Shown here: in pieces, positions 13,074 through 55,533 of the stretch
How the letters are laid out: each line of letters starts with the position of its first letter
Position numbering within the stretch: the first letter of the stretch is position 1
IMG/VR virus record: IMGVR_UViG_3300035665_000001
Coordinates: 186,001 to 250,000 of that record
Length of the DNA stretch: 64,000 bases
Strand: one strand, 5' to 3'
The notes under the pieces: generated by a model
Database searches by the model: none
Told to the model about the DNA's origin: nothing
What the model saw: the letters and a program-made list of their open reading frames with translations, nothing else
Translations under genes and position numbers: made by a program

Positions 13074-14204
13074 ATGAAAACTAAAAATTATCATTATGTT
13101 TACAAAATTACAAATCATAATCCAGTAGATTCACGTAAGTTCTATATTGGTGTTAGAACAACGAAAGGGCGATTACCAGAAGATGATATTAATTATATGG
13201 GTTCATCAGATACATTAACCGCTGCAATTAAAACCCAAGGAAAAAAATATTTTTCTAAAGAAATTTTGTCAGTATGGCAATCAAAGGATGATGCATATGC
13301 TGAAGAAATAAGATTACATGAATTGTATGATGTTTGTAGAAACATGGAATATTATAATAATGCTAACCAAACGAGCACTAAATTTTGTACGGATGGTAGG
13401 GTTGTAGTGTTTGATAAGAACACGGGCAAAACAAAAAGTGTAACAAAAGAAGAATTTCAAACTGTTACTGATTATGTTGGTGTTAAAACAGGTATGGTTT
13501 CCGTAATGGATACTACCGATGGAGTATTTAAATCAGTGTCAAAGGAGGAATTTGAAAAATCCGAACATTATATTCATCCTGCAACTGGTAAAGTAACCGT
13601 GATTGATACCACCGATGGTTTAGTTAAACATGTGAACTGTACAGAATATAGAAGTTGTGAAAATTATGTTTCTATCGCTACTGGAACTGTAACGTGTTAT
13701 GATATTAGAGATGGAAAAAACAAACAAGTTTCTAAAGATGAATTTGATAATGCTGATAATTTAATCAGTTGTAATGCTGGAAAAGTTACTGTGCTTGATA
13801 CTCGTGATGGAATTAAGAAATCGGTAACTAAGGTAGAGTTTGATATTACCTCTCATTATGTCGGTGTTAAATCTGGTAGAGTTACCGCTTTCGATATTCG
13901 GGACAAAAAGTTTAAAACTGTTACGATTGAAGAATTTGCAAATGATGATAATTATGTGAAAGGTAATTCCAAAAAAGTTGTTATTTTTGATAATAATGAT
14001 AATGTGGTTTTTGTATCTTATGGCAATTTTGAAACTTTTTGTAAAAAACATAAATTGCCGTGCTTTGTATTTAGAATGTCATATCGTAATAATGGCAGTC
14101 CAATCTATCAAAATTTAAGAGGCGTAACAAAAGCAAAGATATTTAAAAATGGAAACTACAAATATATCGGTTGGTATGCTAAAATTAGTGATGATACAAC
14201 TTAA
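13074..14204 (+). CDS. GIY-YIG (Seg-like) homing endonuclease with six 32-aa repeats
   Basis: YHYVYKITN..KFYIGVR..YMGSS..KEIL..EIRLH..YYN; then six units of G(K/R)V(T/S)xxDxxDGxxKxVxxxEF. Confidence 0.85.
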   Translation: MKTKNYHYVYKITNHNPVDSRKFYIGVRTTKGRLPEDDINYMGSSDTLTAAIKTQGKKYFSKEILSVWQSKDDAYAEEIRLHELYDVCRNMEYYNNANQTSTKFCTDGRVVVFDKNTGKTKSVTKEEFQTVTDYVGVKTGMVSVMDTTDGVFKSVSKEEFEKSEHYIHPATGKVTVIDTTDGLVKHVNCTEYRSCENYVSIATGTVTCYDIRDGKNKQVSKDEFDNADNLISCNAGKVTVLDTRDGIKKSVTKVEFDITSHYVGVKSGRVTAFDIRDKKFKTVTIEEFANDDNYVKGNSKKVVIFDNNDNVVFVSYGNFETFCKKHKLPCFVFRMSYRNNGSPIYQNLRGVTKAKIFKNGNYKYIGWYAKISDDTT

Positions 14205-26198: not shown

Positions 26199-26719
26199 AT
26201 GAAAATTAATGGGACATTAATGAAAAGTAACTTTAGTAATCCAGTTGAAGCTGCTATACATTTGTTAAATGTTGCATGGGATGACAATCTTCCGGTAAAT
26301 CCAATAAAAATAGCGAACAAAATAGGTATAGAAGTGCGTTCTATTTCTTCGGACTCTTATAGTGGCAAAGCAATGTACGAAGGAAATAAACCAATTGTTG
26401 AGTTTAATGAAAAAGATACTCTTAGTGGTAAATTATTTACTATTTCTCATGAAATAGGACATCATTATCTTGGGCATACTGAAGGTGAAGAACAACATTT
26501 TGTACCACGCATTGATGAAGCTGAAAATTTCAATGTAAACGTAAATGATGAGTATGACAGACAAGCAAATAATTTCGCTATGGAATTGTTGATGCCTTAC
26601 AGTGTGGTTGATTTTTTAATAACTAAAAAAAGATGACCTCATTATATGATTTAGCGAATAAATTTGAAGTATCAACAGTTGCGATGAAATATAGGCTAAA
26701 GAATTTAGGGTGGAATTAA
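26199..26719 (+). CDS. ImmA/IrrE-family zinc metallopeptidase; C-terminal HTH tail is in the -1 frame
   Basis: FTISHEIGH (HExxH), RQANNFAMELLMP; after A7 at 26625-26631 the -1 frame reads MTSLYDLANKFEVSTVAMKYRLKNLGWN to 26719. Confidence 0.75.
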
Positions 26720-26881: not shown

Positions 26882-27106
26882 ATGAGAAGTGATGCATCAA
26901 GATTTACCGAATATGTTTTATTAGATATTAACCAGGCAAACGAAAAATTATCCAAGGCTGTATGGAGTATCAATCAGGTACAACAGCAGTTTACGTCTGA
27001 GAAATTTGAGTATGTAAAACAGCTAATGTACGAATCTAAAGAGATAGATGAATTAAAACGAAATATTGCTGATTTTGAAAAATTGTTAAATAACCATGCT
27101 GATTAG
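26882..27106 (+). CDS. Hypothetical protein, paralog of 39603-39833
   Basis: ESKEIDELKRNIADFEKLL vs ESGAIEKLKQGITDFEAML; similar upstream DNA. Confidence 0.6.
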   Translation: MRSDASRFTEYVLLDINQANEKLSKAVWSINQVQQQFTSEKFEYVKQLMYESKEIDELKRNIADFEKLLNNHAD

Positions 27107-28017: not shown

Positions 28018-28327
28018 ATGCCATTACCGTTTAAAGTTGCTAGTAAATCAACTGAAAAACTGATGTCTTGGAAAGAAGCAGTAAGCTATGTTAAAACGAG
28101 ATGGGTGGTGGTTGGAGATTGCAAACTAAAAATGAAATGAATTGAATTTGATTTACAATTCCAAAACCAATTTTAACGAAAATGAATACTGGTCTGGCAC
28201 GGAGTTTAGTTCAACAAGGTCGTGAATAAAATTCTCCAACTGTTGTGGGTTCAGAAATCTTACTCATAAGTCTCACAGTTACTACATTAGAGCTGTAATG
28301 GATGTTGAACAAGTAAAACAAATCTAA
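28018..28327 (+). pseudogene. Lcl/DUF1566-like pseudogene
   Basis: MPLPFKVASKSTEKLMSWKEAVSYVK / GGWRLQTKNE / YWSGTE..YIRAV, with frameshifts and TGA at the conserved Trp. Confidence 0.75.
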
Positions 28328-29906
28328 ACAACTTATTATGGGGTGTGGATAAAGAAAATGGATAATCAGATAACTTATCTTTATTTTTGTACTCTTGGTG
28401 GATTGGCTAATCCTCGGTGTTACAAAAAGAAACACCAAAATGGAACGCATGTCTACTATACGTATCATTTAAATTATTAGAGTGAAAATAATATGTCTCA
28501 AAGTAAAATTTTAGAAAATCACAATGTGGGGTAAAATGATGAAATCGCAGTTTGTATGGTTTGGTATTTGGTTTTTTGTTATATTTGTACCAATGGTTAG
28601 TTTGGTGGTGTGCCAATTAACCAGGTGCTTTGGTTAGTTATGAATCGGAAAAAATAAACTGTTAGTCGAATGGTTTCATTCACAATCACCACATATTTGT
28701 GAGATATGGAAAAATATGTCTGGTATCGGTTGTGTCCATCACTGTGTGGGTGTTTTAACATTATTTAATTAGGTAGAGAAGAAAATGGCAAATTATATTT
28801 TAGTAGAAGTGGACATGAATGATGCTGATTATGCAAGTAAATTTACACCAATTGATGATGAAGTATTGGCAATTATATTACCTTTAATTGAAAAAATTAA
28901 AGGTAATACAAACCGTCATAATTTTAGTTATCGAGAAAATACAAATGATGGTGAACATGCGTACGAGGTATATGTAAATGAAGAGACGGTTGATCACGAT
29001 GAAGAAGTTCTTGATATGTTTATGGATTTTCTTCCAGTAACAGAATACGGTTTTCATACGATAAAAACTATTGAAATTTATGATGTTGGGCACATTGAAA
29101 AATTTTTATAATCTGTTGAATAATGTTAGATATTGCGTTTGTGTTATTTGGCTATAATTTGAGTGAGTCAAGCGTACTATGTGAACGTGTTTTAACTAAT
29201 ATGTTGAGGAGTTAAAAAATGACTGATATATTATCATATGACGAATTTATTAAAGGGCGTAAACGTTACGAAAGTAAACGCGAATTAGAAGCGATAGACG
29301 ATTTTTTTGATAATGATGAAAATTGCGATGGCGTGACAATTGATGTTTTTATTGGTTTTTTAAAAAAAATTAAGGAAGACCATAAAGACAAAGATCTTCG
29401 CGTAAAGCAAGATAGTTGGTATTCGTCAAACAAAACATACATTACATACACTGTATATGAGTCTGATAAAGACTATACTCAACGAATGACTAAATCCTAC
29501 AATACATACGTTGAAAATCAATCAGCAAAAATGATTAAAATGGCTGTTGATCCAGCAGATAAAATCAAAGCATTAGAAGTGGAGATTGCTAGACTAAGAA
29601 CGTTGATTGGAACAAATGAATGAAAAAATTTCCGGTAATATGGTAAGAAAAAAATGAACAAAAATATTACATTTGAAACGTACAATTATATTACAGTAAC
29701 ATTAGATAAGTTGAGAGATGAAATAATGTATGTTGGTGATACTGATACTCGCATTTCGTTGTTAGAGCATCGTGATGCTATTCAACGCATTATTAGTGGA
29801 CATTCGTTTAAACCAATTAATCCCACCATTCCACCACAAAAACTTCCAAAAGACGGACAATAATATTTTTACATTGATTCATTGAAATGAAAAAGGAAAT
29901 ACAAAA

Positions 29907-30842
29907 ATGTCTAAAAAATTTAAACAAAAAATATCAAAATATATCAATGAGTTGGAATCACGTGGTGTCATTGTTGTGCAAGAAGGTGATTACATGGAAG
30001 ACGAAGATTATACAATTTATGATGTTGTTTATGAATATGTGATGAAATGTAATGACGATGAAATATATCATATCGTCCATCATGCTGATGGACATCTGGA
30101 GTTTACAAATGCAATTGAGGTTGATGTTTTAATTATTGATGATGCGTCAGATTTGTCATTATTATCTAATATCCAAGTTACATTAGATTTGTCGTTAGTG
30201 GAAGATGAAGATGAACCAGCTGATAACGATAGATTGAAATCTGTTGAAAATCAATTAGATAGATTAACACAAATACTATTGCCAATTTCTGAAAAATTGG
30301 ATAACTTGGAACGGAAATTATTAAAATTGAATACTCAACAAGCAAATTATTGTTTAAAATTTAATAAATTGCAGGAAGAAATAACTGGTATCCAAAAACA
30401 CCTAGTGGGTAGTAATGTGCAATCTCCAATTAAATCAAATATCACTTTGAAAAAATCTATTGATGATTTATTTGGTGAGGGTTATTACGATAGTCATCAA
30501 CAATTGGAAAATAGCGACCATCATCAATCGGAAATTAAATCAAAAAACAGTTTGACACGATATATTGATGATTTACTCGAGTTGGGTATTATATCGGCAG
30601 GTAAAAATTGTGGAAGATATTTTGATGGTACCTCAAGAATAATTCATAAAGTTAGTGATGAATATACCCTGACCCATTATAGTGAAATTAACACCTTTGA
30701 TGTTACCGAATTAAATTATGGTGCTGATACATTAACATTATATGGACAAAATGGTGCCTTTGGAGAACGTTATACCAACGAAGATTTTGAAACGTTTTTT
30801 AAAGAATCAAATTATCCATTAAAATTTAAATTAGCTAATTAG
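29907..30842 (+). CDS. Hypothetical protein with central coiled coil
   Basis: 311-aa ORF; heptad-rich segment RLKSVENQLDRL..LQEEITGIQKHL. Confidence 0.65.
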   Translation: MSKKFKQKISKYINELESRGVIVVQEGDYMEDEDYTIYDVVYEYVMKCNDDEIYHIVHHADGHLEFTNAIEVDVLIIDDASDLSLLSNIQVTLDLSLVEDEDEPADNDRLKSVENQLDRLTQILLPISEKLDNLERKLLKLNTQQANYCLKFNKLQEEITGIQKHLVGSNVQSPIKSNITLKKSIDDLFGEGYYDSHQQLENSDHHQSEIKSKNSLTRYIDDLLELGIISAGKNCGRYFDGTSRIIHKVSDEYTLTHYSEINTFDVTELNYGADTLTLYGQNGAFGERYTNEDFETFFKESNYPLKFKLAN

Positions 30843-30913
30843 TGGACTAACGTAATAAATTATAATATAATATATTTTTTAAAATAACTTTTACAAACTA
30901 AAAGGATACTATT

Positions 30914-31852
30914 ATGGACATTAAAACAGAAATTGCCGAATTAAAATCTCGCATTAATATATTAGAACAACAATTAATTGAATTACCAAAAGAATTTCCA
31001 TTTGAAATAGCTCCTAAAATAAGTGAGCGAGAATGTAAATGGGAAGATGCCATTAGCTATTGTGAATTTTTAGGCCATGGATGGAGATTGCCTTATTTGA
31101 ATGAATTGGATTTAATATATCAAACTGAAAATGATTTTGGTGACAATACCTACTGGTCCGATACCACGAGTGGTGGCATTTACGTATGGCTTCATAATAT
31201 GTCTAATGGAAATCAGTTCAGGGACAGTAAGGTTAATAGCAGATACTATGTTAGACCTATCCGTGATTTAGTTAAATCAAAACTACCATTCGAAATAGCA
31301 GATATATCAACTGAGATTAAATCTGATTGGGATAGTGCCGTAGAATATGTTAAAAGATTAGGTAATGAATGGAGATTACCTAGTATAAATGAATTGGATT
31401 TGATTTATCAAACTGAAAACGACTTTGGGGACAATACTTACTGGACCTCTACTGAGGGCAATGGCAATGGCGCATGGGGTCAGAATGTGTCTAATGGGAA
31501 TCAGTTCAACTACAGTAAGAACTTCGGTGGCAACTACGTTAGACCTATCCGCAATTTAGTTAAATCGAAACTACCCTTTGTAATTGCAGCCAAGGCGTTT
31601 GAGATTAAATCTGATTGGGATAGTGCAGTAGAATATGTTAAAACATTGGGTAAAGGATGGCGACTACCAACTAAAGATGAATTAACATTAATTTATCAAA
31701 CTGCAAATGATTTCGGTGACAATACTTACTGGTCCACCACTGAGCCTGATGGCGATTACGCCTGGATTCAGGATATGTCCTGTGGGTATCAGAACTTCCA
31801 CAATAAGTATGGTGGCAATTTCTATGTTAGAGCTGTTAAAGATATAAATTAA
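30914..31852 (+). CDS. Protein with coiled-coil leader and three tandem Lcl/DUF1566-like domains (putative DGR target)
   Basis: Three 96-aa (288-nt) units, each W..A..Y....G..WRLP...EL....YWS...W.......G.Q......YVR. Confidence 0.85.
   Translation: MDIKTEIAELKSRINILEQQLIELPKEFPFEIAPKISERECKWEDAISYCEFLGHGWRLPYLNELDLIYQTENDFGDNTYWSDTTSGGIYVWLHNMSNGNQFRDSKVNSRYYVRPIRDLVKSKLPFEIADISTEIKSDWDSAVEYVKRLGNEWRLPSINELDLIYQTENDFGDNTYWTSTEGNGNGAWGQNVSNGNQFNYSKNFGGNYVRPIRNLVKSKLPFVIAAKAFEIKSDWDSAVEYVKTLGKGWRLPTKDELTLIYQTANDFGDNTYWSTTEPDGDYAWIQDMSCGYQNFHNKYGGNFYVRAVKDIN
31151..31264 (+). repeat. DGR-like variable region VR-A
   Basis: 38 codons; aligns with VR-B and VR-C; variable codons mostly NNY. Confidence 0.7.
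31439..31552 (+). repeat. DGR-like variable region VR-B
   Basis: tac tgg acc tct act gag ggc aat ggc aat ggc gca tgg ggt cag aat ... aac tac gtt aga. Confidence 0.75.
31727..31840 (+). repeat. DGR-like variable region VR-C
   Basis: tac tgg tcc acc act gag cct gat ggc gat tac gcc tgg att cag gat ... ttc tat gtt aga. Confidence 0.75.
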
Positions 31853-31867
31853 AAAGATAATATTAAA

Positions 31868-32548
31868 ATGAATATCAATCAAGAAATTGCAAGAGTAAAA
31901 TATCGCCTTAGTAAATTAGAACAACAGCGAGATGAATTTCGGAGTGTGTTTTTACCAAACAATCGTGATAACAAGATTGATTGGAATTATAACAAAAACC
32001 GTGTTGATAAATGGAGACTGCCTAATGTCTCTAACTACGAAGTTAAAGAATGGTTAATTAACCTTGCATGCGGTGTGCGTTCAAAATTCGTGACCGCTGA
32101 TGAATTAATACATAAATTGCACTCATTGCCTACCGAGGTGCATGAGCGTATAATGTGGCACGCAAGTTTTGATGGTGGGCAATGTTTCGAAGATCTGTTT
32201 AGTGGTGATAGTTCACCTGTTACTGAATCCGCTGCAAGTGAATCGAATTTTGAAATAGCCCCAAAATCAACCGAAGTTAAAACTAATTGGTTCTATGCCA
32301 AGTTATATTGTATTGCTCTTAATATCGATGGAAAGACTGGTTGGCGTATGCCATCTAAAGAAGAACTAAATCAGATATACGAATCTGAAAATGATTTTGA
32401 GAAGGATTGGTATTGGTCATCCACTGAGGCTATTGGTGAACAAGGTCATGGTGATTATGCTTGGTATCAGCATTTTGGTCGATATCCGGTACCGGACTTC
32501 TACCAGAAAAATTACCGCAGATACGTTAGAGCTATTAGAGACATTTAG
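31868..32548 (+). CDS. Coiled-coil leader, unrelated insert and C-terminal Lcl/DUF1566-like domain
   Basis: MNINQEIARVKYRLSKLEQQ leader; FEIAPK..NW..A..YC..GWRMPSKEEL..YWSSTE..YVRAIR. Confidence 0.8.
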   Translation: MNINQEIARVKYRLSKLEQQRDEFRSVFLPNNRDNKIDWNYNKNRVDKWRLPNVSNYEVKEWLINLACGVRSKFVTADELIHKLHSLPTEVHERIMWHASFDGGQCFEDLFSGDSSPVTESAASESNFEIAPKSTEVKTNWFYAKLYCIALNIDGKTGWRMPSKEELNQIYESENDFEKDWYWSSTEAIGEQGHGDYAWYQHFGRYPVPDFYQKNYRRYVRAIRDI

Positions 32549-34453
32549 ATTTTTTAATTGGGACTGATAAATGAAAGATTTTCAAACATTTGAACAAACT
32601 ACAAGGAGTAATGATGCTGTTATTTAAACATGATACACGAGAATATGGTATTAAGATTTCTAAGAAGTATCTTAGATTAGCAGCAACATATAGAAGGTTT
32701 TCAGACAGACATAACCAACATTGGGATTTCTCATTAGAAGCATTAATCGATTGTTTCAACCATGAATCCAGTGGTGGAACTTATTTTGGTAACAATGGTT
32801 ATGTTCATGGCAAATGGAATAAAGATATAACATTTGCTATGTGGGTTGAGGACATTAGAAACGGATATACCGCGAAGATTGAATATTACACACCATTAAA
32901 CAAGTGGTGGGCAATTCCTGCACTATCAACTGTTGCGGTAACAAAGCCATTGTTTCCATATACAGATATTAAAGTAAGAGAAAAGATTATACATGAAAAC
33001 AGAATATAGCTTAATTTAACCTGGTAGAAAATACAATGACCAAAGAATTTGTTCACCGATTGAAAGAATTGGCCGCTACTGATGCTTGGGTGGATATAAT
33101 TCTGGAGAGATTCAATTAACTCGAGAAATTCTAAGTGAGCTTAACATTAAATGGTATGAAGAAGATGAGTAAACAAACGATTCAAGAATATAAAAAACGT
33201 AAGGTTGTTTTAAAACACCCCTGTACTGAGTGTATATCAAAAGATAACGATAAAATAAAGTTAGCATTAGGTTTAACCGCAGCGGTAGCATTGTTAGCTG
33301 GACTTTGTATTGGTTTAGACAATTCAAGACGATAATGAGGCAAACAATGCATGGATTTGATTTTGATTTGATAAGAATGAGAGAAGCAGTGGAATCTAAA
33401 ACTATTTCTATTCCATTAGAAGCATTGGATAGCTTTGAAAAGTTTGATGAATGGATTACTACAAGGCATAATTTATACACCAATATCAGAAATAGATTGC
33501 CAAACCCATTTACCACCGATTATCAATATAAAAATGGGCCATTAGATTTATACACTGAAACGGAGATGTTGAAATTTGCTGAAGCAATTATAAACCACTG
33601 TGTATATATGCTGGATGTAAATGATATATTATTGGTAGATGGTGTTGATAATACGCCAATCCCATCAACCGTAATTAAAAAAGGTTTTGGAATGAGTTTT
33701 AGTGAGGTAACTAAATGAATAAAAATTTTGAGTTGTCAGATTTGTTGGGTTTATTGGTAATATCTTTATTAATTCTTACCTGTGTTAGTATATTTTATTC
33801 TTTGGTTAAAGATGCAAATCAAAAATATGTACAAAATCAAGTATTAGAACAACTCGATAGCCGTACTAAGGATGACAATTATATTAAATCGCATATACAT
33901 TATGGTAAAGACCAATTTGGAAATTGTTGGGTATGGGGGAGTAATAGTGGTCTTGTTTCAATAGAATGTTCTAAAATAGGTAGACAACATGAATGATAAA
34001 TTATTATTATCCAATGAAATTGGAGTGTATCCAAATCCACCGATTTCTGGTACATACCCCGTTTTCATTGAAAATACAATATTTGGCTTTCAACCGTATA
34101 TGAATTTTGATGGGAAATTATGGGACGTTCCACATGAGTTCATAAACAAACGAATTTGGTGGCTTAATGAAAAATGGGACAATATTAATGAACTATCACA
34201 GTGAAAAATAAGAAAATGAGTGAAGAATATATTTTACCACCGAAAGATTTAATTGATAATGATGATATTGATTACAAAAAGGAACTGACTAAGGCATTAC
34301 GAGAAGCCACAGGATGTTATACGATGGAATGCAAAAGGGCATTGATGTTATTTGATTGGGATTTTATCCAGGCAAAGGCATATTTGGAAAACCCAATAAA
34401 TTCTATGCGTATATTGAATTTAAGAATTTAAATGGAAATTTGTGAAAAAGTTC

Positions 34454-34482
34454 TTGACAAACTTTACACAGAATGGTATAAT
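34454..34482 (+). promoter_or_regulatory. Consensus sigma70-type early promoter
   Basis: TTGACA-17 nt-TATAAT, with TG at the extended -10 position. Confidence 0.75.
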
Positions 34483-35094
34483 AATTTAAACTAATTGGTT
34501 GGAGAGAAAATGAAGATTAAATTGTTTGACGTATTTTGTATTTGTGCATTTGTTATTATATCAATAGTTGTTATTATATCAATGGGAATAATTTGGTTTG
34601 TTATTTTCACATTTGTTAAAATTCCGGCATATCTATTTGTTTTTGTGGTATTATGGGGGTTGAGTGTTTTTTATTTGATGCGTATAATTATTAATGGTAT
34701 GATGCTTATTGATGGATTCCCACTTGGAGTAAGAAAAAAATGACAAATAAGAGAGATAATATTTTAATGTCTGTAATTCTTGGTGGGATATTTGGTATTG
34801 TATTAACTGTAATTTTTTCCTGGAATAAGGCAACTAAATTAGATTGTCCGATAAAAATGGCCAGAATTCATAATGATTGGGGATTTGAAGAATTGGAACA
34901 AGCGTGTGGCATAGAACTTAGTGCGTCTAAAGAAAGTTGTATTCGCAGATTATCAAAAATTCATAGTGATTGGCGAGTAGAAGAATTAAGACAGGCTTGT
35001 TAATGAAATTTTTTGCTAATAATAGTTTAGGTTTAGATGTAGATTTCGGTTTGAATAGCATGTTAAAAAATACAGTAGAATCAGTTGATAAAAT

Positions 35095-35382
35095 TTGGAG
35101 AAAACAATAACATTATCATTTGAAATAGCACCGAAAGAATATGAAAGATGGTTAAATTGGGATGATAGTAAATTATATTGCACATTATTAATACTAAATG
35201 AACAGGATGATTGGCGATTACCCACCTTAACTGAATTGAATCACATGTTTAAATCTGAAAATGATTTTGCAAGCACAGGTTATTGGTCGTCTTCTGAGGG
35301 CATTAGTAATGATTGTGGGACAGAATACTACGGTGGCAAGGTTTTTAGTTGTTATGTTCGTCCTGTAAGAACTATTAAATAA
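35095..35382 (+). CDS. Single Lcl/DUF1566-like domain with shortened variable region
   Basis: FEIAPK..NW..YC..WRLPTLTEL..YWSSSE..YVRPVR; the AW segment of the VR is deleted. Confidence 0.75.
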   Translation: MEKTITLSFEIAPKEYERWLNWDDSKLYCTLLILNEQDDWRLPTLTELNHMFKSENDFASTGYWSSSEGISNDCGTEYYGGKVFSCYVRPVRTIK

Positions 35383-35451
35383 TTAACAAACCATATTAAC
35401 TAGTGATTATTTTTAGTTGATGGTAGAGAATAATTAAAGAGATAACTTACG

Positions 35452-35742
35452 AATATCGAAATAAGTCATAAAGAATTTGAAAAAAAGTTAAACTGGTATG
35501 ATGGAATGAGGTATTGTCAATTATTAGATATTGATGGTAAGAAGGATTAGAGGATGCCTACTAAAGAAGAATTAAATGAAATATATAATTCTGAAAATGA
35601 TTTTGTCGGTTTCTTCTACTGGTCGTCTACTGAGTACAATGGTAACACCGCCTGGTATCAGGCTTTCTCGAATGGGTATCAGTTCAACTATTTCAAGAAT
35701 ACCTGCAACTATGTGTGTGCTGTGCGGAGTTCAACCATTTAA
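35452..35742 (+). pseudogene. Lcl/DUF1566-like gene with in-frame TAG, carrying GC-rich VR-D (35617-35727)
   Basis: NIEISHKEFEKKLNWYDGMRYCQLLDIDGKKD*RMPTKEEL; TAG replaces the conserved Trp; TAA upstream at 35443 and no in-frame start. Confidence 0.75.
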
Positions 35743-35764
35743 TTTTTTTATCCATACTCTGTCG

Positions 35765-35880
35765 GAAAACCCAGTCCCTTTAGGGGTACGGTATAAATCA
35801 ACTGGGAAAATATCTTAAAGAAAAATAATTATTTTGTGGAGAACTACCTGTCCATCCTTAACCTAAAGTCCGAGGTCTTA
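35765..35880. mobile_element. Remnant IS200/IS605-type end hairpins
   Basis: GAAAACCCAGTCCCTTTAGGGG..TCAAC on +, plus a 44/50 copy of the 4591-4640 left-end-like sequence. Confidence 0.55.
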
Positions 35881-35909
35881 TGTCAGTAATGTTAAAAAAG
35901 GAAAAGAAA

Positions 35910-36557
35910 ATGAATATCAAAGAAGAAATCGATAATTTAAAAAAATTTATTGGGATTCATGAAAAAAGATTAGCTAAATTGGAACAACAATTATTAGAAT
36001 CAGAATCACGATTTGAAATAGCACCGAAGCTATTAGAAAAAGAAAATGTAAATTGGAATGAGGCTGTTAAATACTGTGAACTGTTGGGTAATGGATGGCG
36101 TTTACCATCTAAAGACGAATTAAAAATAATTCTTACATTGGAAAATGACTTAAACACAAACTATAGATATTGGTCAACAGCTACTAGGGGTAATAAAGAT
36201 CTTATTGCTTTTAATCAAAGTTTGTATAGAGGATATCGAGTTAGACCTATTAGAGATATTATTAAACCAAAATCATGTTTACCGTTCGAAGTTGCTGATA
36301 AATCAACTGAAAATAGATTATCATGGAATGAGGCTGTAAAATATGTTAAAACATTAGGTAAAGGTTGGAGATTGCCAACTAAACATGAATTAACTTTAAT
36401 CTATATTTCTGATAATGATTTTGACAAGGAATACTATTGGTCTAGTACAGAGTTTAATTCTACAGACGCTTGGGGGAAGGTCTTCGACGGTGGGTATGAG
36501 ACCACCAGCAATAAGGCTGGTAGTAACTATGTTAGAGCTATCCGTCCAATTCTTTAA
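35910..36557 (+). CDS. Coiled-coil leader plus two Lcl/DUF1566-like domains (VR-E 36435-36545)
   Basis: Two GWRLP..EL..YW..VR units; the terminal VR has mostly NNY codons. Confidence 0.82.
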   Translation: MNIKEEIDNLKKFIGIHEKRLAKLEQQLLESESRFEIAPKLLEKENVNWNEAVKYCELLGNGWRLPSKDELKIILTLENDLNTNYRYWSTATRGNKDLIAFNQSLYRGYRVRPIRDIIKPKSCLPFEVADKSTENRLSWNEAVKYVKTLGKGWRLPTKHELTLIYISDNDFDKEYYWSSTEFNSTDAWGKVFDGGYETTSNKAGSNYVRAIRPIL

Positions 36558-36645
36558 TTATTAGATCATTTGTAAGAGGAATGAAAATGAAATCTATCAA
36601 TACAACTAAATTGTACACCATTAATCGTTAAACTAATACAATATG

Positions 36646-36674
36646 TTGACAAACGCACAATGGTGTGTTATAAT
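36646..36674 (+). promoter_or_regulatory. Consensus sigma70-type early promoter
   Basis: TTGACA-17 nt-TATAAT. Confidence 0.75.
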
Positions 36675-37867
36675 ATACACAGTGAATAACTTTTACAAAT
36701 TAAAAGGACCAAATCAAATGAAAATTTTCAAACAAACAACGAGTATTATTAGTATTATTTTTGCATTAGCTGTATGTTTATTTTCCGTATCAGCGTTTAT
36801 ACATGCGTTATTTGTAATTCCAGCTTTTAGAATGTACTTAGGCCAGATGATTGTTGTCTGTGGAGCCACTTATCTATTTTTCAAGGGTATATTTGAGCTA
36901 TTGTCAATGTATATTGATTATGATCAACACCGAAAATAATGGTAGACCATCGATTACATAATATGTGAATTAACTAACTTTTCAACTAAGGGGTGTGTTA
37001 ATGAACAACATTGATGAGGATATTTTTGATGAATACTATCTAAGTCGGAGTAGATGTACACAATAATCCACTAATTAAAATGTTTGAGGATGAAAAAAAT
37101 GTTTGAACCTGCAAAAGAAATGTTACATAAAGCAAATGAAAATTTTAAAGCACTTTTTGAAGAGAAGATTACTGAAGTTGGTCCATGTATTCAAGAAGCA
37201 CTATTTGATGTGGCTGCTAAGGGAGAGTATAAAACTACCATCATATTTACTGGTCGTTCACATCGCAATCCAATTGGTTGGATACCAAACAACTATGTCC
37301 ACTATAATGAAGAAGATACAATGCTCAGTGCATTAACTGAGTTCTTTTGTGAACAATTGACTAATGATGGTTATGGTGTAGTTACCCAAATGGTTAAAAA
37401 TGATATAATTGTGATAACGATTTTTTTTAATCCTATGAAGACAAATAAAATGGGTACAAATTTACATGCAGTAGGTAATGGTTACTAAGACGGATGAGTA
37501 AACGGAACAACAAATTATCTTTGAATTGTATCAAACGTCAACTAATGTTACCTGGGATATATTAACCTCAATTCAGAACAAACATATTTTGAGTGGGTGA
37601 TTACGTTTAGGATAAAGATTATGCCCCCAGTTTACGGAGATGATGATTATTTCTGGTAGTATCCACCAATATGGTATAATATAATTTTTGAAGGTGATAT
37701 GCGCATTTAATAGAGTTAGATAATTTTAGTACTAAATGATGAGAATATTGGATATATGGTTGAATTATATTTAACAAATTCCATCAGAGTTAGAGCTATT
37801 TAATATGGTGTGTCACATGGTGAGTGGGATTAGAGATAGATTATCAATTATACTGAGTAATATAAAA

Positions 37868-38644
37868 ATGAATATTAATGAAGAAATTGCTGAAGTAAAA
37901 TCAATTATTGCAGTTCAAGAAAAACGATTAGCTGAATTAGAAAAGCAATCAAATGAATTAACATTTGAAATAGCTCCGGAGTTATTAGAAAAAGGCAATG
38001 TGGATTGGTATGAGGCGATTAACTATTGTAAATTGTTAGGTAATGGTTGGCGACTTCCATCTCGGGATGAACTGAAAATAATTTATAACTCTGATAATGA
38101 CTTGAACGAAAACAGTACGTATTGGTCAGCTACAAGGGGTAATAATGATCGTCTTGCTTTTAATCAAAGTATGTATAATGGGGATCAATTTATTTCGGAT
38201 AAAAGTTTTAGTTCCAATGAATATCGAGTTAGACCGATAAGGGATATTATTAGACCAAATTTATCGTTTGAAGTAGTTAATAAATCGACTGAGATTCAAG
38301 TGGAATGGGATAGTGTGGATAAGCATTGTAAACCGTTAGGTTTATCAACTACCGATGAATTACCGTTTGAAATTTCTCCTAAATCATGTGAAAAACAATG
38401 CAATTGGTATGAAGCATTTGAATATGCTGAATTTGTGGATCAAGGTTGGAGAATACCCACAATAGATGATTTAAAGCTTATTTTTCAAAACCGTAAAGGT
38501 ACAAATATGGAGCTTGGTGTTTATTGGACAAAAAATGTATATGGGCATACCGCTTTAGGTATTAATATGCTGAATGGATTACAACAACCGTATGGTAAAG
38601 AAATGGGTAACAACTACATTAGGCTAATTCGGAATAAAAAATGA
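37868..38644 (+). CDS. Coiled-coil leader plus two Lcl/DUF1566-like domains and a truncated middle unit
   Basis: First domain is closely paralogous to 35910-36250; FEVVNKSTEIQVEWDSV is a truncated unit; last domain is divergent. Confidence 0.8.
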   Translation: MNINEEIAEVKSIIAVQEKRLAELEKQSNELTFEIAPELLEKGNVDWYEAINYCKLLGNGWRLPSRDELKIIYNSDNDLNENSTYWSATRGNNDRLAFNQSMYNGDQFISDKSFSSNEYRVRPIRDIIRPNLSFEVVNKSTEIQVEWDSVDKHCKPLGLSTTDELPFEISPKSCEKQCNWYEAFEYAEFVDQGWRIPTIDDLKLIFQNRKGTNMELGVYWTKNVYGHTALGINMLNGLQQPYGKEMGNNYIRLIRNKK

Positions 38645-39153
38645 ATATAAAGAAAGAGACGATGTACACATTTGATGGGTTGAAAAACGCATGTCGAAAT
38701 GAAGTAATTGATTTTATTGAAGAATTGATGAAAGAAATTGACTTTCAACCTACTTGGTATGACCATAAGGAATCTGATTCTGATTTGCCTCGAGTACCAG
38801 TAACACCATCTGGGACATATATGTATGCCTTAAAAGTAATTAACAGTAGATGTAAAGAGTGGGAACATTTAATAATGGAGGAACCCAAATATTCGTATTT
38901 GTATGCATTAAACGTAATTGGTGGGAGATGGGAAGAGGCAGAACCAATTATTATGACTGATCCACAGTATGCATATTCGTATGCCATTGAGGTGATTAAA
39001 GGTAGATGGGAGCTAGGAGAGACTGTTATTAAAGAAGATTCCTATTATGCCTATTTGTATGCCCGAGATATACTTAAAGAGAGGTGGTGGGATGCTGAAC
39101 CTTATATAATGGAAACATCATGGTGGAAAAGGTATATACGTGATCTTGGATAA
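38641..39153 (+). CDS. Repeat protein (about 24-aa YAxxVIxGRWxEAEPxI units)
   Basis: YALNVIGGRWEEAEPII, YAIEVIKGRWELGETVI, YARDILKERWWDAEPYI. Confidence 0.7.
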   Translation: MNIKKETMYTFDGLKNACRNEVIDFIEELMKEIDFQPTWYDHKESDSDLPRVPVTPSGTYMYALKVINSRCKEWEHLIMEEPKYSYLYALNVIGGRWEEAEPIIMTDPQYAYSYAIEVIKGRWELGETVIKEDSYYAYLYARDILKERWWDAEPYIMETSWWKRYIRDLG

Positions 39154-39602: not shown

Positions 39603-39833
39603 GTGTTTACTCACGAACAGGATATTGATAACGCATTGTTTGATATTGACCAAATGCACAAAAAATTAGCTGATCACGTTTGTTGGGTGTCAAATGTTAT
39701 GCGTGATCTTGATAATACGGAAATTGAGAAATTAAAAACACTGGTCACTGAGTCAGGTGCAATTGAAAAATTAAAACAAGGTATTACTGATTTTGAAGCA
39801 ATGTTGGATCATCGAGGAATTAAAAATGAATGA
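39603..39833 (+). CDS. Hypothetical protein, paralog of 26882-27106
   Basis: GTG start with GAGG RBS; protein and upstream DNA resemble the 26882 locus. Confidence 0.6.
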   Translation: MFTHEQDIDNALFDIDQMHKKLADHVCWVSNVMRDLDNTEIEKLKTLVTESGAIEKLKQGITDFEAMLDHRGIKNE

Positions 39834-39954: not shown

Positions 39955-40338
39955 ATGAATCACCAACCACCAATATCTATCACCAAAGAACACTATGACA
40001 ACAGAGATGTAATTTATTCGGATACATTGTTTGTGGTATGGATGCCAGATAATACCAGAAGAAAAACAATCGAACTAGCTATCAATGCAGTACGTTTATC
40101 TTGGCTTGATTTATCTTGGGCTAATTTAGCACATGACGATTTATCTGGGTTAGATTTATCGGGTTTGGATCTTTCTTATACTAATTTAACGTTTGCAAAT
40201 TTGTCAAATGCTAATCTAACCAATGCGAATTTATTTCAAGCAAGTTTACGTGGTGCTGATCTTACGAACACCATGATAAATAATACAAATCTTCAATATG
40301 CTGATTTAAGTTATACATTATTAAAAAATGACAGATAA
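39955..40338 (+). CDS. Pentapeptide-repeat protein
   Basis: ANLAH DDLSG LDLSG LDLSY TNLTF ANLSN ANLTN ANLFQ ASLRG ADLTN. Confidence 0.85.
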   Translation: MNHQPPISITKEHYDNRDVIYSDTLFVVWMPDNTRRKTIELAINAVRLSWLDLSWANLAHDDLSGLDLSGLDLSYTNLTFANLSNANLTNANLFQASLRGADLTNTMINNTNLQYADLSYTLLKNDR

Positions 40339-40391: not shown

Positions 40392-43300
40392 ATTACTATC
40401 AAATTATTATTAGAAATATTCAAAATATATGCATGAAAAAGTAAAACCATTTTTGCCTGTTTACACTAGACCACCAAATGTCTTTTTGCGATATGAAGAA
40501 ACAAGATTTGATGATGGATATGGGCATACAGGTATAGCTAGAACAGCATTCTTTTTAACTAAAAAGAAAGAAGAAATGTCAATGATTGCCCAAATTATTT
40601 GGGATAACTTATGAGGATTAAATAATGAATTTGTACTTGTTGGAACAAGAAGAAAATAGTGGTTATGATACTTATGATTCTATGGTAGTAGCAGCAGAAA
40701 CTGAAGATAAAGCCAGATTAATTCATCCAAATACTTGGTTAGATAATCCTTGGGATAGAACAAAATTTAATAGAGATTGGGCAACTTCTCCCGATCAAGT
40801 TTCTGTTAAGTTAATCGGAACAGCGGTAGAAGGAACAAAATCTGGTGTGATTTTATCATCATTTAATGCAGGTTAGATAAGGAAAGAATATGCCTTTTAA
40901 AAAACATAGAACTGATTGTATATCAGAGTATGCAAACACAATTGCAAAGTTGTCTGTAGAGTTGGCTGTTTTAGGTACAAACCGGGATGATGCTGTTAAA
41001 TGTACCACAAAATTGATTAGTACCCTATTGAATAAATTGATGTTGAGTCCAGGGGCAGTAGAGATTCTAAAACATGATTTAAAAAATAATGTTATTCCAC
41101 TGTATAATTCTACTATTAAAAATGAGAGTGAAAATCAATATCCTACACCTGTTAAACAAAAAAAGTTAACGGTGGATTTTAATTTCGATTTGGAGAGAAT
41201 GAAAGTTGCGGTTGAATCAAAAAAAATTGAGATTCCAAAACATGCTTTAGAAAGTTTTGAAGCTTTTGATGCCTGGTTGAATGATGATGAACTACCTAAA
41301 AAGCAAATTTGTCCACAGAAAGTAAATGGACATTGTCCACTACATAATTTGTTTTGTAAATATCCAGAATGTGAGAAAATCCCTTTAGGGATGGGTAATT
41401 GACAATCAACTTTTTGCAGAAATTATCAAATCATTGCACCACTGATAATAGTAAAAAAATTGTAATAATAGAAATCGTATTGGTTGCAGAGATGTCTAAA
41501 GATTCTCTAACTATCCAATCACTTTTTTGAGTAAAGGTAGGTATAATTATGAAAAATGCTAAAGCCGAAATTGTAGAAATTGTATCAAAAATTAATCCTG
41601 ATTTGGTTAGTCATGTTGATTTACTAAACATTGATAAGGCATGTTTTCAGTGTGGTCATTTTAACAAAAATTTAAAAGATGTAGATGTATATCGATGCTA
41701 TAATATTGGTACGTGTATATCGGCAACATTACATCCCGAAATCACTGATAAAATTTGGAGTGAATACACTGAAAATTTTTGGAAAGATGTTGATTGTGGT
41801 ATAATATAGGTGACAGATGAAAGTGTATGTGGTTTACTATACCGATGGTTTAGGGATGTCAGATCGTTTTTGTGGTGTGTTTGATTCTCCCGAATCATGT
41901 ATTACATTTATCGATCGTCAAGATTTTAGTTGGTATTATGATTGGTTTTCATCAAAAGTATTATCTAAAGATGATCTAACATTGGATGATGTTTAAAACT
42001 ATTATGGATTGTGGGTAAAAATGGCACAAATTGAAAACCCAGATTTAAAAATTTTTAAAGTTGTTTTAACAGAATATGAACGTGGCTGGGGATCTAAAAT
42101 CTGGGACACATTGTATTTTGATAATGAATTAGAAGCAAAAACATTTGCTACTGACTACAATCAACAAAATAATAGTGATTCTTATGTACCCGATTGGTAT
42201 GTTAGTGCGACTTATGAAGGTAAAGTAAGATAATGATGGTTGATTATGAAATATTATAACAGTAAGATAAGAGAGTTGGCTAATAAAACTGCGAATGAAA
42301 TAGCGGATCAATTTGCAATAGGTTATTTTGATGATCGTATGGTTGAATTACATTCTGACATTATAGAAAGAAATATGCTCACAATCGTGGATTTGTGCTC
42401 TCTAATAATATTAGAAGATGATAAGAAACAGGTTTCAATGTTTGATAAATTATTGAGAAATGATGCAGAGGAAATGCATAATCTTAGTAAAAAAATTAAA
42501 CTTTATTTTGGTGTGTTATAATGCATACATATATACAGAATATTGCCGATCAGGCTACCGAATATGCCAGTTTAAAGAAAAATTTGGTATGTGTTCAACT
42601 GCAAATGGTAATTAAACCGATGTTAAGAAAATTAAAATAACTATATTACATTAAAAAATAGTAATAACAGAATCTAATGGAAATAGGAATTAATATGCAT
42701 GAAAACGTAAAACGAATTATTGATCAGTGGGATGAAATTTTAGATGATGAAGCTGATTTTGATGTCGAGTTAGCTAAATTGGTGGAAATAGTTGTTTTTG
42801 ATGTTATCAACAATATCAATGATGTTAAATATGAATCTGGAAAAAGTCTTTCTAAAATTATTGAAACTGTGATTAAAAACCATTATGGTTTAGAATATGA
42901 ACATTAAAAATAGATATTTGTTGGTTTACCATTTTGAGTTGAATTTATGAATGAAAAAATTAAAGAAATTGCAACTAGGTGTAATTGGGTAGATTTAACT
43001 GGCGACGATAACTGGATCAACATTGAAGCTAATAAACGTGGTTATTTCACTGAAAAAGATTTAGAAAAGTTTGCAAGAGAGATAGTAAAAGAATGTATTG
43101 GTGTGTATGTGACCATTGCAAATGGTAATTATGTTGAGGATACCGATGATTACATTGTTGCGATTGGAAAAACATTTTTAACTGAGCGAAAAGTGGAAGA
43201 ATGATATTATGGTCACCAAAATTCAAAAATTGATAAGTAAGTTTGATGATAATTTTTTAGATAAAAATGATTCATTCGAACAAATGATGGAAAAATTTGC

Positions 43301-55470: not shown

Positions 55471-55533
55471 AATACTTGTTAAATTATTATAAAACTAACA
55501 ATCAAAAAATAAAAAACTTTATTGGAGAACAAA

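What the first reader, a model, noticed from the sequence alone, without database searches (positions are those of the whole stretch)
28018..38644. Dispersed multi-target DGR-like array: about 11 Lcl/DUF1566-like domains in 7 loci, with no RT or template in the window
Seen: the domains end in a shared ~111-114 nt segment with fixed scaffold (TAY TGG ..ACT GAG / GCN TGG / CAG / GGG / CAG / AAG / TAY GTT AGA). Intervening codons vary freely at positions 1-2 while position 3 stays C/T, e.g. VR-A agt ggt ggc att tac, VR-B ggc aat ggc aat ggc, VR-C cct gat ggc gat tac, VR-D tac aat ggt aac acc. These segments are GC-richer than the surrounding DNA. Known: this NNY pattern is what A-specific mutagenesis of AAY codons by a diversity-generating retroelement produces, and C-type-lectin-fold domains are typical DGR targets. 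Inference: a remote DGR diversifies a whole family of small, non-tail-fibre proteins scattered through the early region. Predicted template: about TACTGGTCNTCTACTGAG(AAY)5GCCTGGAATCAGAAT..AATGGGAATCAGAACAACAACAATAAG(AAY)4-5TAYGTTAGA.
Basis: partly seen in the sequence, partly recalled or inferred. Interest (0 to 1): 0.9.

Follow-up and report, generated by a model that had tools for sequence, protein, structure and literature searches.

The report
Eroded DGR target array in jumbo phage
A giant phage carries eleven copies of a small lectin-like binding domain; five to seven still show the marks of a retroelement that rewrites such domains in related phages, but here the copies look frozen and decaying, not actively diversified.

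Summary
There are 11 Lcl_C (DUF1566, C-type-lectin fold) domains in 7 loci. Five copies (A, B, C, G, I) end in a GC-rich segment where 79 of 84 variable codons are NNY (background 49%, p=6e-19). The window has no RT, Avd or template.

It sits between a bAvd gene and a DGR reverse transcriptase in related jumbo phages, one on a 271,688-bp scaffold. There the variable regions (VRs) differ from the template (TR) only at adenines (0-1 other mismatches) and differ between samples.

The window's copies behave differently:
- Only 51-73% of mismatches to the best template fall on adenines.
- The copies differ from each other at 20-42% of non-adenine sites (relatives: mean 7%).
- They share no common 3' homing sequence.
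- Two copies are pseudogenes.
- The locus is 100% identical in five other assemblies.
- About 160 kb of contiguous genome lacks RT and Avd, and pattern scans of the 306-kb contig find no template.

Verdict: a family of former DGR targets, now frozen and eroding. A DGR in the unseen part of this genome (at least 364 kb) is not excluded.

The parts
28018..28310 (+). Decayed Lcl_C copy (psi). Reading it needs at least two frame changes and passes a TGA. Its C-terminal segment shows no NNY pattern.
   Evidence: Sequence and frames. Domain HMM hit on the first fragment only. No adenine bias against any template.
30914..31852 (+). 312-aa ORF: a short N-terminal heptad-like helix, then three tandem Lcl_C domains (A 31001-31270, B 31289-31558, C 31577-31849).
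   Evidence: Pfam PF07603, 6.6e-34, three stretches. Translation. AlphaFold2 model of domain B with pLDDT 96; best PDB match is the Legionella Lcl C-terminal domain 8q4e (TMq 0.76).
31151..31255 (+). VR-like segment of domain A; partly eroded (codons AGG and AGA, ACC ACG in place of ACT GAG).
   Evidence: Against the best template: adenine sites 19/45, other sites 16/60, p=0.07.
31439..31543 (+). VR-like segment of domain B, the best preserved. All 17 variable codons are NNY.
   Evidence: Against the L226 template: adenine sites 16/44, other sites 6/61, p=1e-3.
31727..31831 (+). VR-like segment of domain C. All 17 variable codons are NNY.
   Evidence: Adenine sites 19/44, other sites 10/61. 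Differs from neighbouring copy B at 12/61 non-adenine sites.
31868..32548 (+). 226-aa ORF with one Lcl_C domain (E, 32249-32545). Its C-terminal segment is only partly NNY and is conserved, not variable, across phages.
   Evidence: Pfam. 88.5% amino-acid identity to a 231-aa ORF in L027; 95% nucleotide identity to L033.
35095..35382 (+). 95-aa single-domain ORF (F) with a shortened C-terminal segment.
   Evidence: Pfam 1.1e-6 (below the family's cut-off). Codons.
35455..35742 (+). Copy G, a pseudogene: no start codon, and TAG (35539-35541) replacing the conserved Trp. It keeps a nearly pristine NNY VR (35617-35718) and the only homing-site-like 3' end, CGGAGTTCAACCATTTAA. Nothing resembling Avd, TR or RT follows it.
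   Evidence: Adenine sites 16/41, other sites 10/52. No GC hairpin downstream.
35880..36557 (+). 225-aa ORF: N-terminal helix plus domains H (36012-36290, truncated, not DGR-like) and I (36285-36554; VR-like 36435-36536, eroded).
   Evidence: Pfam. Codons. Copy I: adenine sites 18/41, other sites 17/52.
37805..38644 (+). 279-aa ORF: N-terminal helix, domain J (37964-38260), a 33-residue stump of a further domain (38267-38365), and domain K (38366-38641). None of these is DGR-like.

Best explanation
The array is a paralogous family of small proteins. Each has a short N-terminal helix that probably oligomerises, followed by one to three Lcl_C (C-type-lectin-fold) domains. The C-terminal loops of these domains are former variable regions of a diversity-generating retroelement.

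In an ancestor, or in a donor phage, a template rich in AAY codons was reverse-transcribed with errors at adenines. It was then copied into these segments, leaving NNY codons in a GC-rich scaffold.

In this phage that rewriting has stopped, at least for the family as a whole. The copies have since evolved by ordinary duplication, point mutation (mostly C>T at third positions, towards the genome's 30% GC), deletion and pseudogenisation. The result is a series running from nearly pristine (B, C, G) through eroded (A, I, E, F) to unrecognisable (H, J, K, psi).

What remains is a fixed, germline-like set of different binding surfaces, not a hypervariable one.

Shown: the fold, the footprint, the erosion, the lack of variation between assemblies, and a live DGR with matching template in relatives.

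Inferred: that the proteins bind ligands through the former VR face, that the N-terminal helix oligomerises them, and whether the cassette was lost from this lineage or the genes were imported from a DGR-bearing relative.
For: Footprint:
- 79/84 NNY codons, excess NNC, Y-ending four-fold codons.
- VR GC 40-48% against 27-34% upstream.
- The variable positions coincide with the AAY codons of an independently found template.

A live system in relatives, which also serves as positive control:
- The order VR, GC hairpin, bAvd, TR, RVT_1 in L156 and L223-L228. L223 is the end of a 271,688-bp scaffold.
- Cassette-adjacent and several array VRs have 0-1 non-adenine mismatches against 16-22 adenine mismatches.
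- These VRs differ at 21-30 of 105-108 nt between contigs whose avd genes are 97-100% identical.

Erosion in the window:
- Only 51-73% of mismatches fall on adenines. Non-adenine sites mismatch at 10-33%.
- Pairwise non-adenine divergence averages 0.30, against 0.07 in relatives.
- 45 of 87 non-adenine changes are C>T, mostly at third positions.
- Third-position divergence inside the VRs (0.39) is about the same as outside them (0.42).
- The 3' ends differ between copies, and only G resembles the relatives' homing site.
- No GC hairpin follows any copy.
- Two copies are pseudogenes and one is a stump.

No machinery found:
- None in the window.
- None in about 160 kb of contiguous genome (Pfam columns; HMMs).
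- Three template-catching patterns return only VRs B, C and G, or nothing, on the 306-kb contig.
- Two RT peptide scans of IMG/VR return 58 and 43 RT loci, none on that contig.

No variation: 7.8-21 kb spanning the array is 100% identical in five other assemblies.
Against: - The genome is not fully seen. The 306-kb contig is not the whole genome, because another assembly continues past its end and the continuation is a separate 58-kb contig that is not in IMG/VR. Contig positions 1-158,170 were checked only by pattern scans, and the sequence beyond the first ~11 kb past the contig end was not checked at all.
- Copy B has only 6/61 non-adenine mismatches to a relative's template. Two of these are shared by all five copies, so a lineage-specific template that still serves B cannot be ruled out.
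- DGR-bearing relatives also carry eroded copies (10-18% non-adenine mismatches). Erosion of some copies therefore does not prove the DGR is absent.
- Assemblies give consensus sequences. Low-frequency variants within a population would not show, and some of the five assemblies may be re-assemblies of the same samples.
- The metagenome collection that was scanned is incomplete. It missed a matching template that is present in JGI sample 3300044655.
Confidence: 0.68

Rival explanations
1. An active DGR lies in the unseen part of this phage's genome and still rewrites one or a few copies (B or G are the best candidates). The other copies are retired targets, as in the relatives.
For: - Relatives with a proven cassette also hold mixtures of in-sync and eroded VRs.
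- B has only 6/61 non-adenine mismatches, two of them shared by all window copies.
- G keeps a homing-site-like 3' end.
- Much of the genome (at least 364 kb in all) was checked only by pattern scans or not at all.
- DGR cassettes sit at contig ends in relatives, so assemblies tend to lose them.
Against: - Three patterns that would catch a B-, C- or G-type template find none on the 306-kb contig.
- Two RT peptide scans find none there either.
- About 160 kb read directly has no RT or Avd.
- The locus is invariant across assemblies, unlike the relatives' VRs.
- G is a pseudogene with nothing downstream.
Confidence: 0.17
2. The DGR of a co-infecting related jumbo phage acts in trans on this phage's copies.
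For: - The Bordetella phage avd, TR and brt work in trans from a plasmid, as cited in PMC5758913.
- The relatives occur in the same kinds of samples and have exchanged at least one Lcl_C gene with this phage: 88.5% amino-acid identity for ORF 31868, against 35-70% for the few other shared genes.
Against: - The window copies carry 10-33% non-adenine mismatches to every relative template. Homing from those templates would erase such mismatches.
- The locus does not vary between assemblies.
- The homing-site-like 3' end is degenerate in all copies except G.
Confidence: 0.04
3. There is no DGR history. The NNY pattern reflects selection for Asn, Gly, Ser, Tyr and Asp in binding loops, plus local codon bias.
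For: Binding loops are often rich in these residues. Third positions do vary between C and T.
Against: - Synonymous choice is also biased: 20/23 four-fold codons end in C or T, and C is used 2.6 times more than background in a 30% GC genome.
- The variable codons coincide one for one with the AAY codons of a real template next to Avd and RT.
- The scaffold is conserved at the DNA level with about 130 canonical DGR templates from 34-64% GC contigs.
Confidence: 0.02

Closest known systems
The DGR of related jumbo phages found here (L156, L223-L228; arrays in L015, L024, L027, L028, L033, L036)
   Same: - The same Lcl_C domain family.
- The same VR scaffold at the DNA level (TAYTGG TCN TCT ACT GAG ... 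GCN TGG ... CAG ... AAG ... TAY GTT AGA).
- The same two VR classes (ATG TCN and TTC NNY).
- Many small paralogous genes per genome.
- A 3' end like that of copy G.
- One gene (ORF 31868) is 88.5% identical at the protein level.
   Different: - The relatives have bAvd, TR and RT. Their VRs match the template at all but 0-1 non-adenine sites, vary between samples, and are followed by a GC hairpin.
- Their array genes are mostly single domains of about 100 aa in overlapping tandem runs of 4-8.
- The window has no cassette and its VRs are eroded. Its proteins have an N-terminal helix and 1-3 domains, and its genome is 30% GC against 37-40%.
DGR variable proteins of the DUF1566 / CLec2 class (category 'd' of Wu et al. 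2018, PMC5758913; type example Legionella LdtA)
   Same: - A C-type-lectin-fold domain detected as DUF1566/Lcl_C, with the VR at its C-terminal end.
- About half of that class are short proteins made of the domain alone.
   Different: - Members of that class are defined by a cognate template with adenine-only mismatches. No such template was found for the window copies.
- LdtA is a surface lipoprotein. The window proteins have no recognisable signal or lipobox by my reading of the translations.
Multi-target and remote-target DGRs (Treponema denticola, 7 non-adjacent targets; Stenotrophomonas, 8 tandem targets; Wu et al. 2018)
   Same: One retroelement serves many paralogous CLec targets, some of them far from the RT.
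   Different: - Wu et al. saw remote targets (more than 100 kb from the RT) in DGRs without evidence of phage association, with one exception.
- Here the family is on a jumbo phage, and the window's copies are not in register with any template.
Legionella pneumophila Lcl C-terminal domain (PDB 8q4e)
   Same: The best structural match to the model of domain B (TMq 0.76, 28% identity). It is the founding member of Pfam PF07603.
   Different: Lcl is a bacterial collagen-like adhesin and is not a DGR target. The window domains are shorter (about 90 against 131 residues) and sit behind a short helix, not a collagen repeat.
Bordetella phage BPP-1 DGR (Mtd, avd, TR, brt)
   Same: The mechanism that left the footprint: adenine-specific mutagenic retrohoming into the C-terminal CLec loops of a binding protein (established knowledge).
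   Different: - Mtd is a tail-fibre tip protein with one VR next to the cassette.
- The window family is not recognisably virion-associated, has many copies, and has no cassette.

Membership tests
Diversity-generating retroelement (complete system) | Reverse transcriptase of the DGR clade | tested here: not met
   - An HMM of 11 DGR RTs finds nothing in the window or in about 160 kb of contiguous genome. The one 12-bit hit has no Pfam RVT match.
- The Pfam columns show no RVT_1.
- The IMG/VR peptide scans return no locus on the 306-kb contig.
- The rest of the genome was not read.
Diversity-generating retroelement (complete system) | A template repeat paired with the VR, with mismatches almost only at template adenines | tested here: not met
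   - There is no template in the window, and none on the 306-kb contig by three patterns.
- Against the closest real templates, 51-73% of mismatches in A, B, C, G and I fall at adenines. Controls give 94-100%.
Diversity-generating retroelement (complete system) | Accessory gene (Avd or HRDC) next to the TR and RT | tested here: not met
   phmmer with the relatives' bAvd gives nothing at E<=0.05 in the window or the walked loci. No PF22296 appears in the Pfam columns.
Diversity-generating retroelement (complete system) | A homing sequence (IMH) at the 3' end of each VR, with a downstream hairpin | tested here: inconclusive
   - Copy G ends in CGGAGTTCAACCATTTAA, against CGGAGATCAACCATTTAG in the relatives.
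- The other copies share nothing beyond TAYGTTAGA.
- The relatives have a 7-8 bp GC hairpin after the VR. No window copy does.
Diversity-generating retroelement (complete system) | Variation of the VR between or within populations | tested here: not met
   The locus is 100% identical in five other assemblies. The relatives' VRs differ at 21-30 of about 105 nt between contigs. Read-level variation could not be tested.
DGR variable-protein fold (C-type lectin, CLec2/DUF1566 class) | C-type-lectin-like fold with the variable residues in the C-terminal loops | tested here: met
   The AlphaFold2 model has pLDDT 96. Foldseek finds 8q4e (Lcl C-terminal domain) and then many C-type-lectin-like chains. 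The VR maps to residues of about 51-85 of the 90-residue domain.
DGR variable-protein fold (C-type lectin, CLec2/DUF1566 class) | VR codons of NNY type derived from AAY template codons | tested here: met
   79/84 in copies A, B, C, G and I. Not met in H, J, K and psi.
Pfam PF07603 Lcl_C (formerly DUF1566) | Profile match above the curated cut-off (34.9 bits) | tested here: met
   117.1, 44.1, 66.9 and 64.7 bits for ORFs 30914, 31868, 35880 and 37805. ORF 35095 and the 62-aa piece of G score 29.3 and 27.4 bits, below the cut-off.

The most novel reading that the evidence does not exclude
A DGR that was not seen still rewrites a subset of the copies (B or G). It could lie in the unread part of this genome (at least 364 kb) or be carried by a co-infecting related jumbo phage and act in trans. 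In that case giant phages would keep a mixed repertoire of 'live' and 'frozen' binding modules, possibly diversified across genome boundaries.
Probability: 0.15. Interest if true: 0.8.

Novelty: new member of a known kind. Interest (0 to 1): 0.5.

Why it matters
- It documents the afterlife of DGR targets. A single genome holds a graded series from nearly pristine to unrecognisable former variable regions, so the birth, retirement and decay of hypervariable binding domains can be read directly.
- It uncovered a live DGR with polymorphic templates in related jumbo phages. That DGR serves arrays of tiny lectin-fold proteins, not a tail fibre. A 2021 survey of 224 jumbo phages reported no such DGR-type lectin domains (PMC7824862).
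- If the function of these small proteins were known (virion decoration, host-surface binding or binding of host factors), the frozen and live versions would make a natural comparison of fixed and adaptive repertoires.

Tried and rejected
- Megablast and tblastn of the array against GenBank phages found nothing. The DNA polymerase gives only about 27% identity to Rak2/XacN1-like jumbo phages, so no annotated relative could be used.
- The pattern ATG TCN AAY GGN AAY CAG (AAY)4 AAG found nothing in IMG/VR, although such templates exist in ENA and JGI contigs.
- The supplements of Roux et al. 2021 do not list these metagenomes.
- I first assumed the 306-kb contig was a circularly permuted complete genome. 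That was wrong: the sequence continues into a separate 58-kb contig that is absent from IMG/VR.
- RT homologues at 75-80% identity to the relatives' RT (P0002, P0003, P0121) could not be assigned to a sample.
- A template scan of 185,579 bacterial and archaeal genomes found nothing, so a host-borne template is unsupported.
- A 12-bit RT-HMM hit on a 551-aa protein has no Pfam RVT match and was dismissed as chance.
- I looked for repeats at the assembly breakpoints 24,224 and 39,531 and found none.

Full report
**What is there.** The window is 29.6% GC phage DNA, with a family-B DNA polymerase, a UvsX/RecA-like gene and many small ORFs. It corresponds to positions 186,001-250,000 of a 306,333-bp metagenomic contig, Ga0334984_0000005, which is also IMGVR_UViG_3300035665_000001.

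Between 28,018 and 38,644, all on the + strand, a six-frame motif scan and Pfam find 11 Lcl_C (PF07603, formerly DUF1566) domains in 7 loci:
- a decayed copy at 28018-28310;
- three tandem domains (A, B, C) in ORF 30914-31852;
- one (E) in ORF 31868-32548;
- one (F) in ORF 35095-35382;
- one (G) at 35455-35742;
- two (H, I) in ORF 35880-36557;
- two (J, K), plus a 33-residue stump, in ORF 37805-38644.

An AlphaFold2 model of domain B is confident (pLDDT 96). Its best PDB match is the Legionella Lcl C-terminal domain 8q4e (TMq 0.76), followed by many C-type-lectin-like chains. By my reading of the translations, the three larger proteins start with a heptad-like helix of about 25-50 residues and have no signal peptide.

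**The footprint is real.** In A, B, C, G and I the last ~105 nt of the domain follow the scaffold TAY TGG TCN NNY ACT GAG (NNY)5 GCN TGG NNY CAG ... GGG NAY CAG (NNY)4 AAG (NNY)4-5 TAY GTT AGA.
- I took as variable the 17 codons that are AAY in a template found later and independently. By that definition 79 of 84 codons are NNY, against 49% in the window's other long ORFs (p=6e-19).
- C is used at 44% of the Y-ending codons, against 17% (p=1e-8).
- Four-fold-degenerate codons end in C or T in 20 of 23 cases (p=2e-4).
- The segments are 40-48% GC, against 27-34% for the upstream half of the same domains.
- H, J, K and the 28018 copy lack all of this. E and F are intermediate.

The window holds no RT, Avd or A-rich template.

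**The predicted template exists, in relatives.**
- IMG/VR pattern scans showed that the scaffold is the canonical template of DUF1566-class DGRs (about 130 templates, each next to an RT, in contigs of 34-64% GC).
- They also showed that other jumbo-phage contigs (327, 372, 88 and 48 kb; 37-40% GC) carry tandem arrays of 4-8 overlapping single-domain Lcl_C genes of about 100 aa with the same VR scaffold.
- A metagenome scan for the predicted template returned L156, a 1.8-kb contig with the order VR, GC hairpin, Avd, TR, RT.
- Looking up its Avd found the same cassette in 31 blocks of the collection. One copy is at the end of a 271,688-bp scaffold, next to further Lcl_C genes and DUF7487 genes. 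The DUF7487 family is also abundant in the window's phage.
- The templates are polymorphic among strains with identical Avd...AAT ATG TCA AAT GGC......ATG AAT AAT......TTC AAC AAT.... These match the two VR classes seen in the window (A-C against G and I).
- In these relatives the cassette-adjacent VRs and several array VRs have 16-22 mismatches at template adenines and 0-1 elsewhere.
- Those VRs differ at 21-30 of about 105 nt between contigs whose avd genes are 97-100% identical. That is an active multi-target DGR, and it serves as the positive control for the tests below.

**The window's copies are not in register with any template.**
- Against the best-fitting of the three template types:

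| Copy | Mismatches at adenine sites | Mismatches at other sites |
|---|---|---|
| B | 16/44 | 6/61 |
| C | 19/44 | 10/61 |
| G | 16/41 | 10/52 |
| A | 19/45 | 16/60 |
| I | 18/41 | 17/52 |

- E, F, H, J, K and psi show no significant adenine bias.
- Between copies, template non-adenine sites differ at 20-42% (mean 0.30). The mean is 0.07 among the relatives' VRs.
- Third-position divergence inside the VRs (0.39) is about the same as in the rest of the domain (0.42).
- Of 87 non-adenine changes, 45 are C>T, mostly at third positions. That is the direction expected from drift towards a 30% GC genome.
- Beyond TAYGTTAGA the 3' ends differ between copies. Only G keeps a sequence like the relatives' homing site (CGGAGTTCAACCATTTAA against CGGAGATCAACCATTTAG).
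- G has no start codon, has TAG in place of the conserved Trp, and is followed by 138 nt of unrelated DNA, not by a hairpin, Avd, TR and RT.
- The 28018 copy is broken by frameshifts and a stop.
- The copies therefore cannot all be current products of one template. Neighbours B and C, in the same protein, differ at 12 of 61 non-adenine sites.

**No variation, no machinery found.**
- Five other contigs from JGI, ENA and Logan assemblies cover 7.8-21 kb of the locus at 100% identity. Some may be re-assemblies of the same samples.
- Walking the genome with all twelve contig look-ups gave contiguous sequence from contig position 158,170 to the contig end, plus about 11 kb beyond. No RVT_1, bAvd or further Lcl_C gene appears there.
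- On the 306-kb contig, three patterns that would catch a B-, C- or G-type template return only VRs B, C and G, or nothing. Two RT peptide scans return no locus there.
- A scan of 185,579 prokaryotic genomes found no such template.

**Limits.**
- The 306-kb contig is not the whole genome. The sequence continues into a separate 58-kb contig that is absent from IMG/VR. Contig positions 1-158,170 were covered only by pattern scans, and the sequence beyond the first ~11 kb past the contig end was not examined.
- The metagenome collection that was scanned is incomplete.
- Reads were not available.

**Interpretation.** The most economical reading is that this is a family of former DGR targets. The NNY footprint was written by a template like that of the relatives. 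This happened either in a common ancestor that later lost the cassette, or in a donor from which the genes were imported.
- Exchange does occur. ORF 31868 is 88.5% identical in protein, and 85-95% in DNA, to relatives whose few other shared genes are 35-70% identical.
- Since then the copies have duplicated, drifted and partly died.
- By analogy with other CLec-fold DGR proteins and with Lcl, the surviving proteins probably display the former VR face as a ligand-binding surface on a small oligomer. That part is inference.
- I put this reading at about 0.68.
- The main rival (about 0.17) is a cassette in the unseen part of the genome that still serves one or a few copies, as in the relatives, which also carry eroded copies alongside live ones.

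**Comparison with what is known.**
- DUF1566-class DGR targets, short targets made of the domain alone, multi-target DGRs and remote-target DGRs are all documented (PMC5758913).
- What is less familiar is their presence as large arrays on jumbo phages. A 2021 survey of 224 jumbo phages found no DGR-type lectin domains (PMC7824862), and full-text searches found no paper describing this.
- Also less familiar is a genome in which the whole decay series is preserved.
- The window itself is best filed as a new member of a known kind. It fails the membership test for a complete DGR, but it plainly descends from one.

Noticed in passing
window 24224 and 39531: Two other assemblies (ENA ERZ28008831 and JGI 3300035188) both break at exactly these coordinates. 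They yield a separate 15.3-kb contig that holds the entire Lcl_C array. No repeat was found at either boundary. The segment may be an island that varies between strains.
   Followed up: partly
L223-L228 and L156 (related jumbo phages): The template repeat itself is polymorphic among strains whose Avd protein is identical (ATG TCA, ATG AAT and TTC AAC versions; one has an extra AAC codon). Cassette-adjacent VRs are 105 or 108 nt long. The DGR cassette sits at contig ends in most assemblies.
   Followed up: partly
window 31868-32548 against L027:5399-6091 and L033:1-306: This one Lcl_C gene is 88.5% identical in protein and 85-95% in DNA between the 30% GC phage and the 37-39% GC relatives. The few other shared genes are 35-70% identical. 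This suggests recent gene exchange between the lineages.
   Followed up: partly
window 55522-56856: The UvsX/RecA-like gene has Hint/intein Pfam hits on its product (PT-HINT, Hint_2, Intein_splicing), so it probably carries an intein. A topoisomerase gene beyond the contig end also shows an intein hit.
   Followed up: no
window 13074-14204: A 376-aa ORF matches PHROGs families for a homing endonuclease and an NAD synthetase.
   Followed up: no
window 38641-39153: The 170-aa protein directly after the array is made of three or four internal repeats of about 25 residues (YxYxYAxxVIxGRWxExEPxIM-like). It has no Pfam hit.
   Followed up: no
window 39955-40338: A 127-aa ORF has a pentapeptide-repeat-like run (LSGLDLSGLDLSYTNLTFANLSNANLTNANL...).
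   Followed up: no
window 33305-33718 and 40890-41402; also 26882-27106 and 39603-39833: Two pairs of small paralogous ORFs flank the array. One pair shares a FDLxRMxxAVESKxIxIP...SFExFDxW motif. The other pair shares a C-terminal ...KLKxxIxDFExxL motif.
   Followed up: no
L216, L217, L222, L229, L233 (same genome, outside the window): - The phage encodes anti-defence-type genes: Acb1 (PF23474) and Apyc1 (PF23023).
- It also encodes an actin-like Alp7A/ALP_N protein, Cpn60, and at least six DUF7487 genes.
- Several assemblies, including the 306-kb contig, end next to one of the DUF7487 genes.
   Followed up: no
window 26199-26636: A Peptidase_M78 (ImmA/IrrE-type) gene lies just upstream of the array region.
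   Followed up: no
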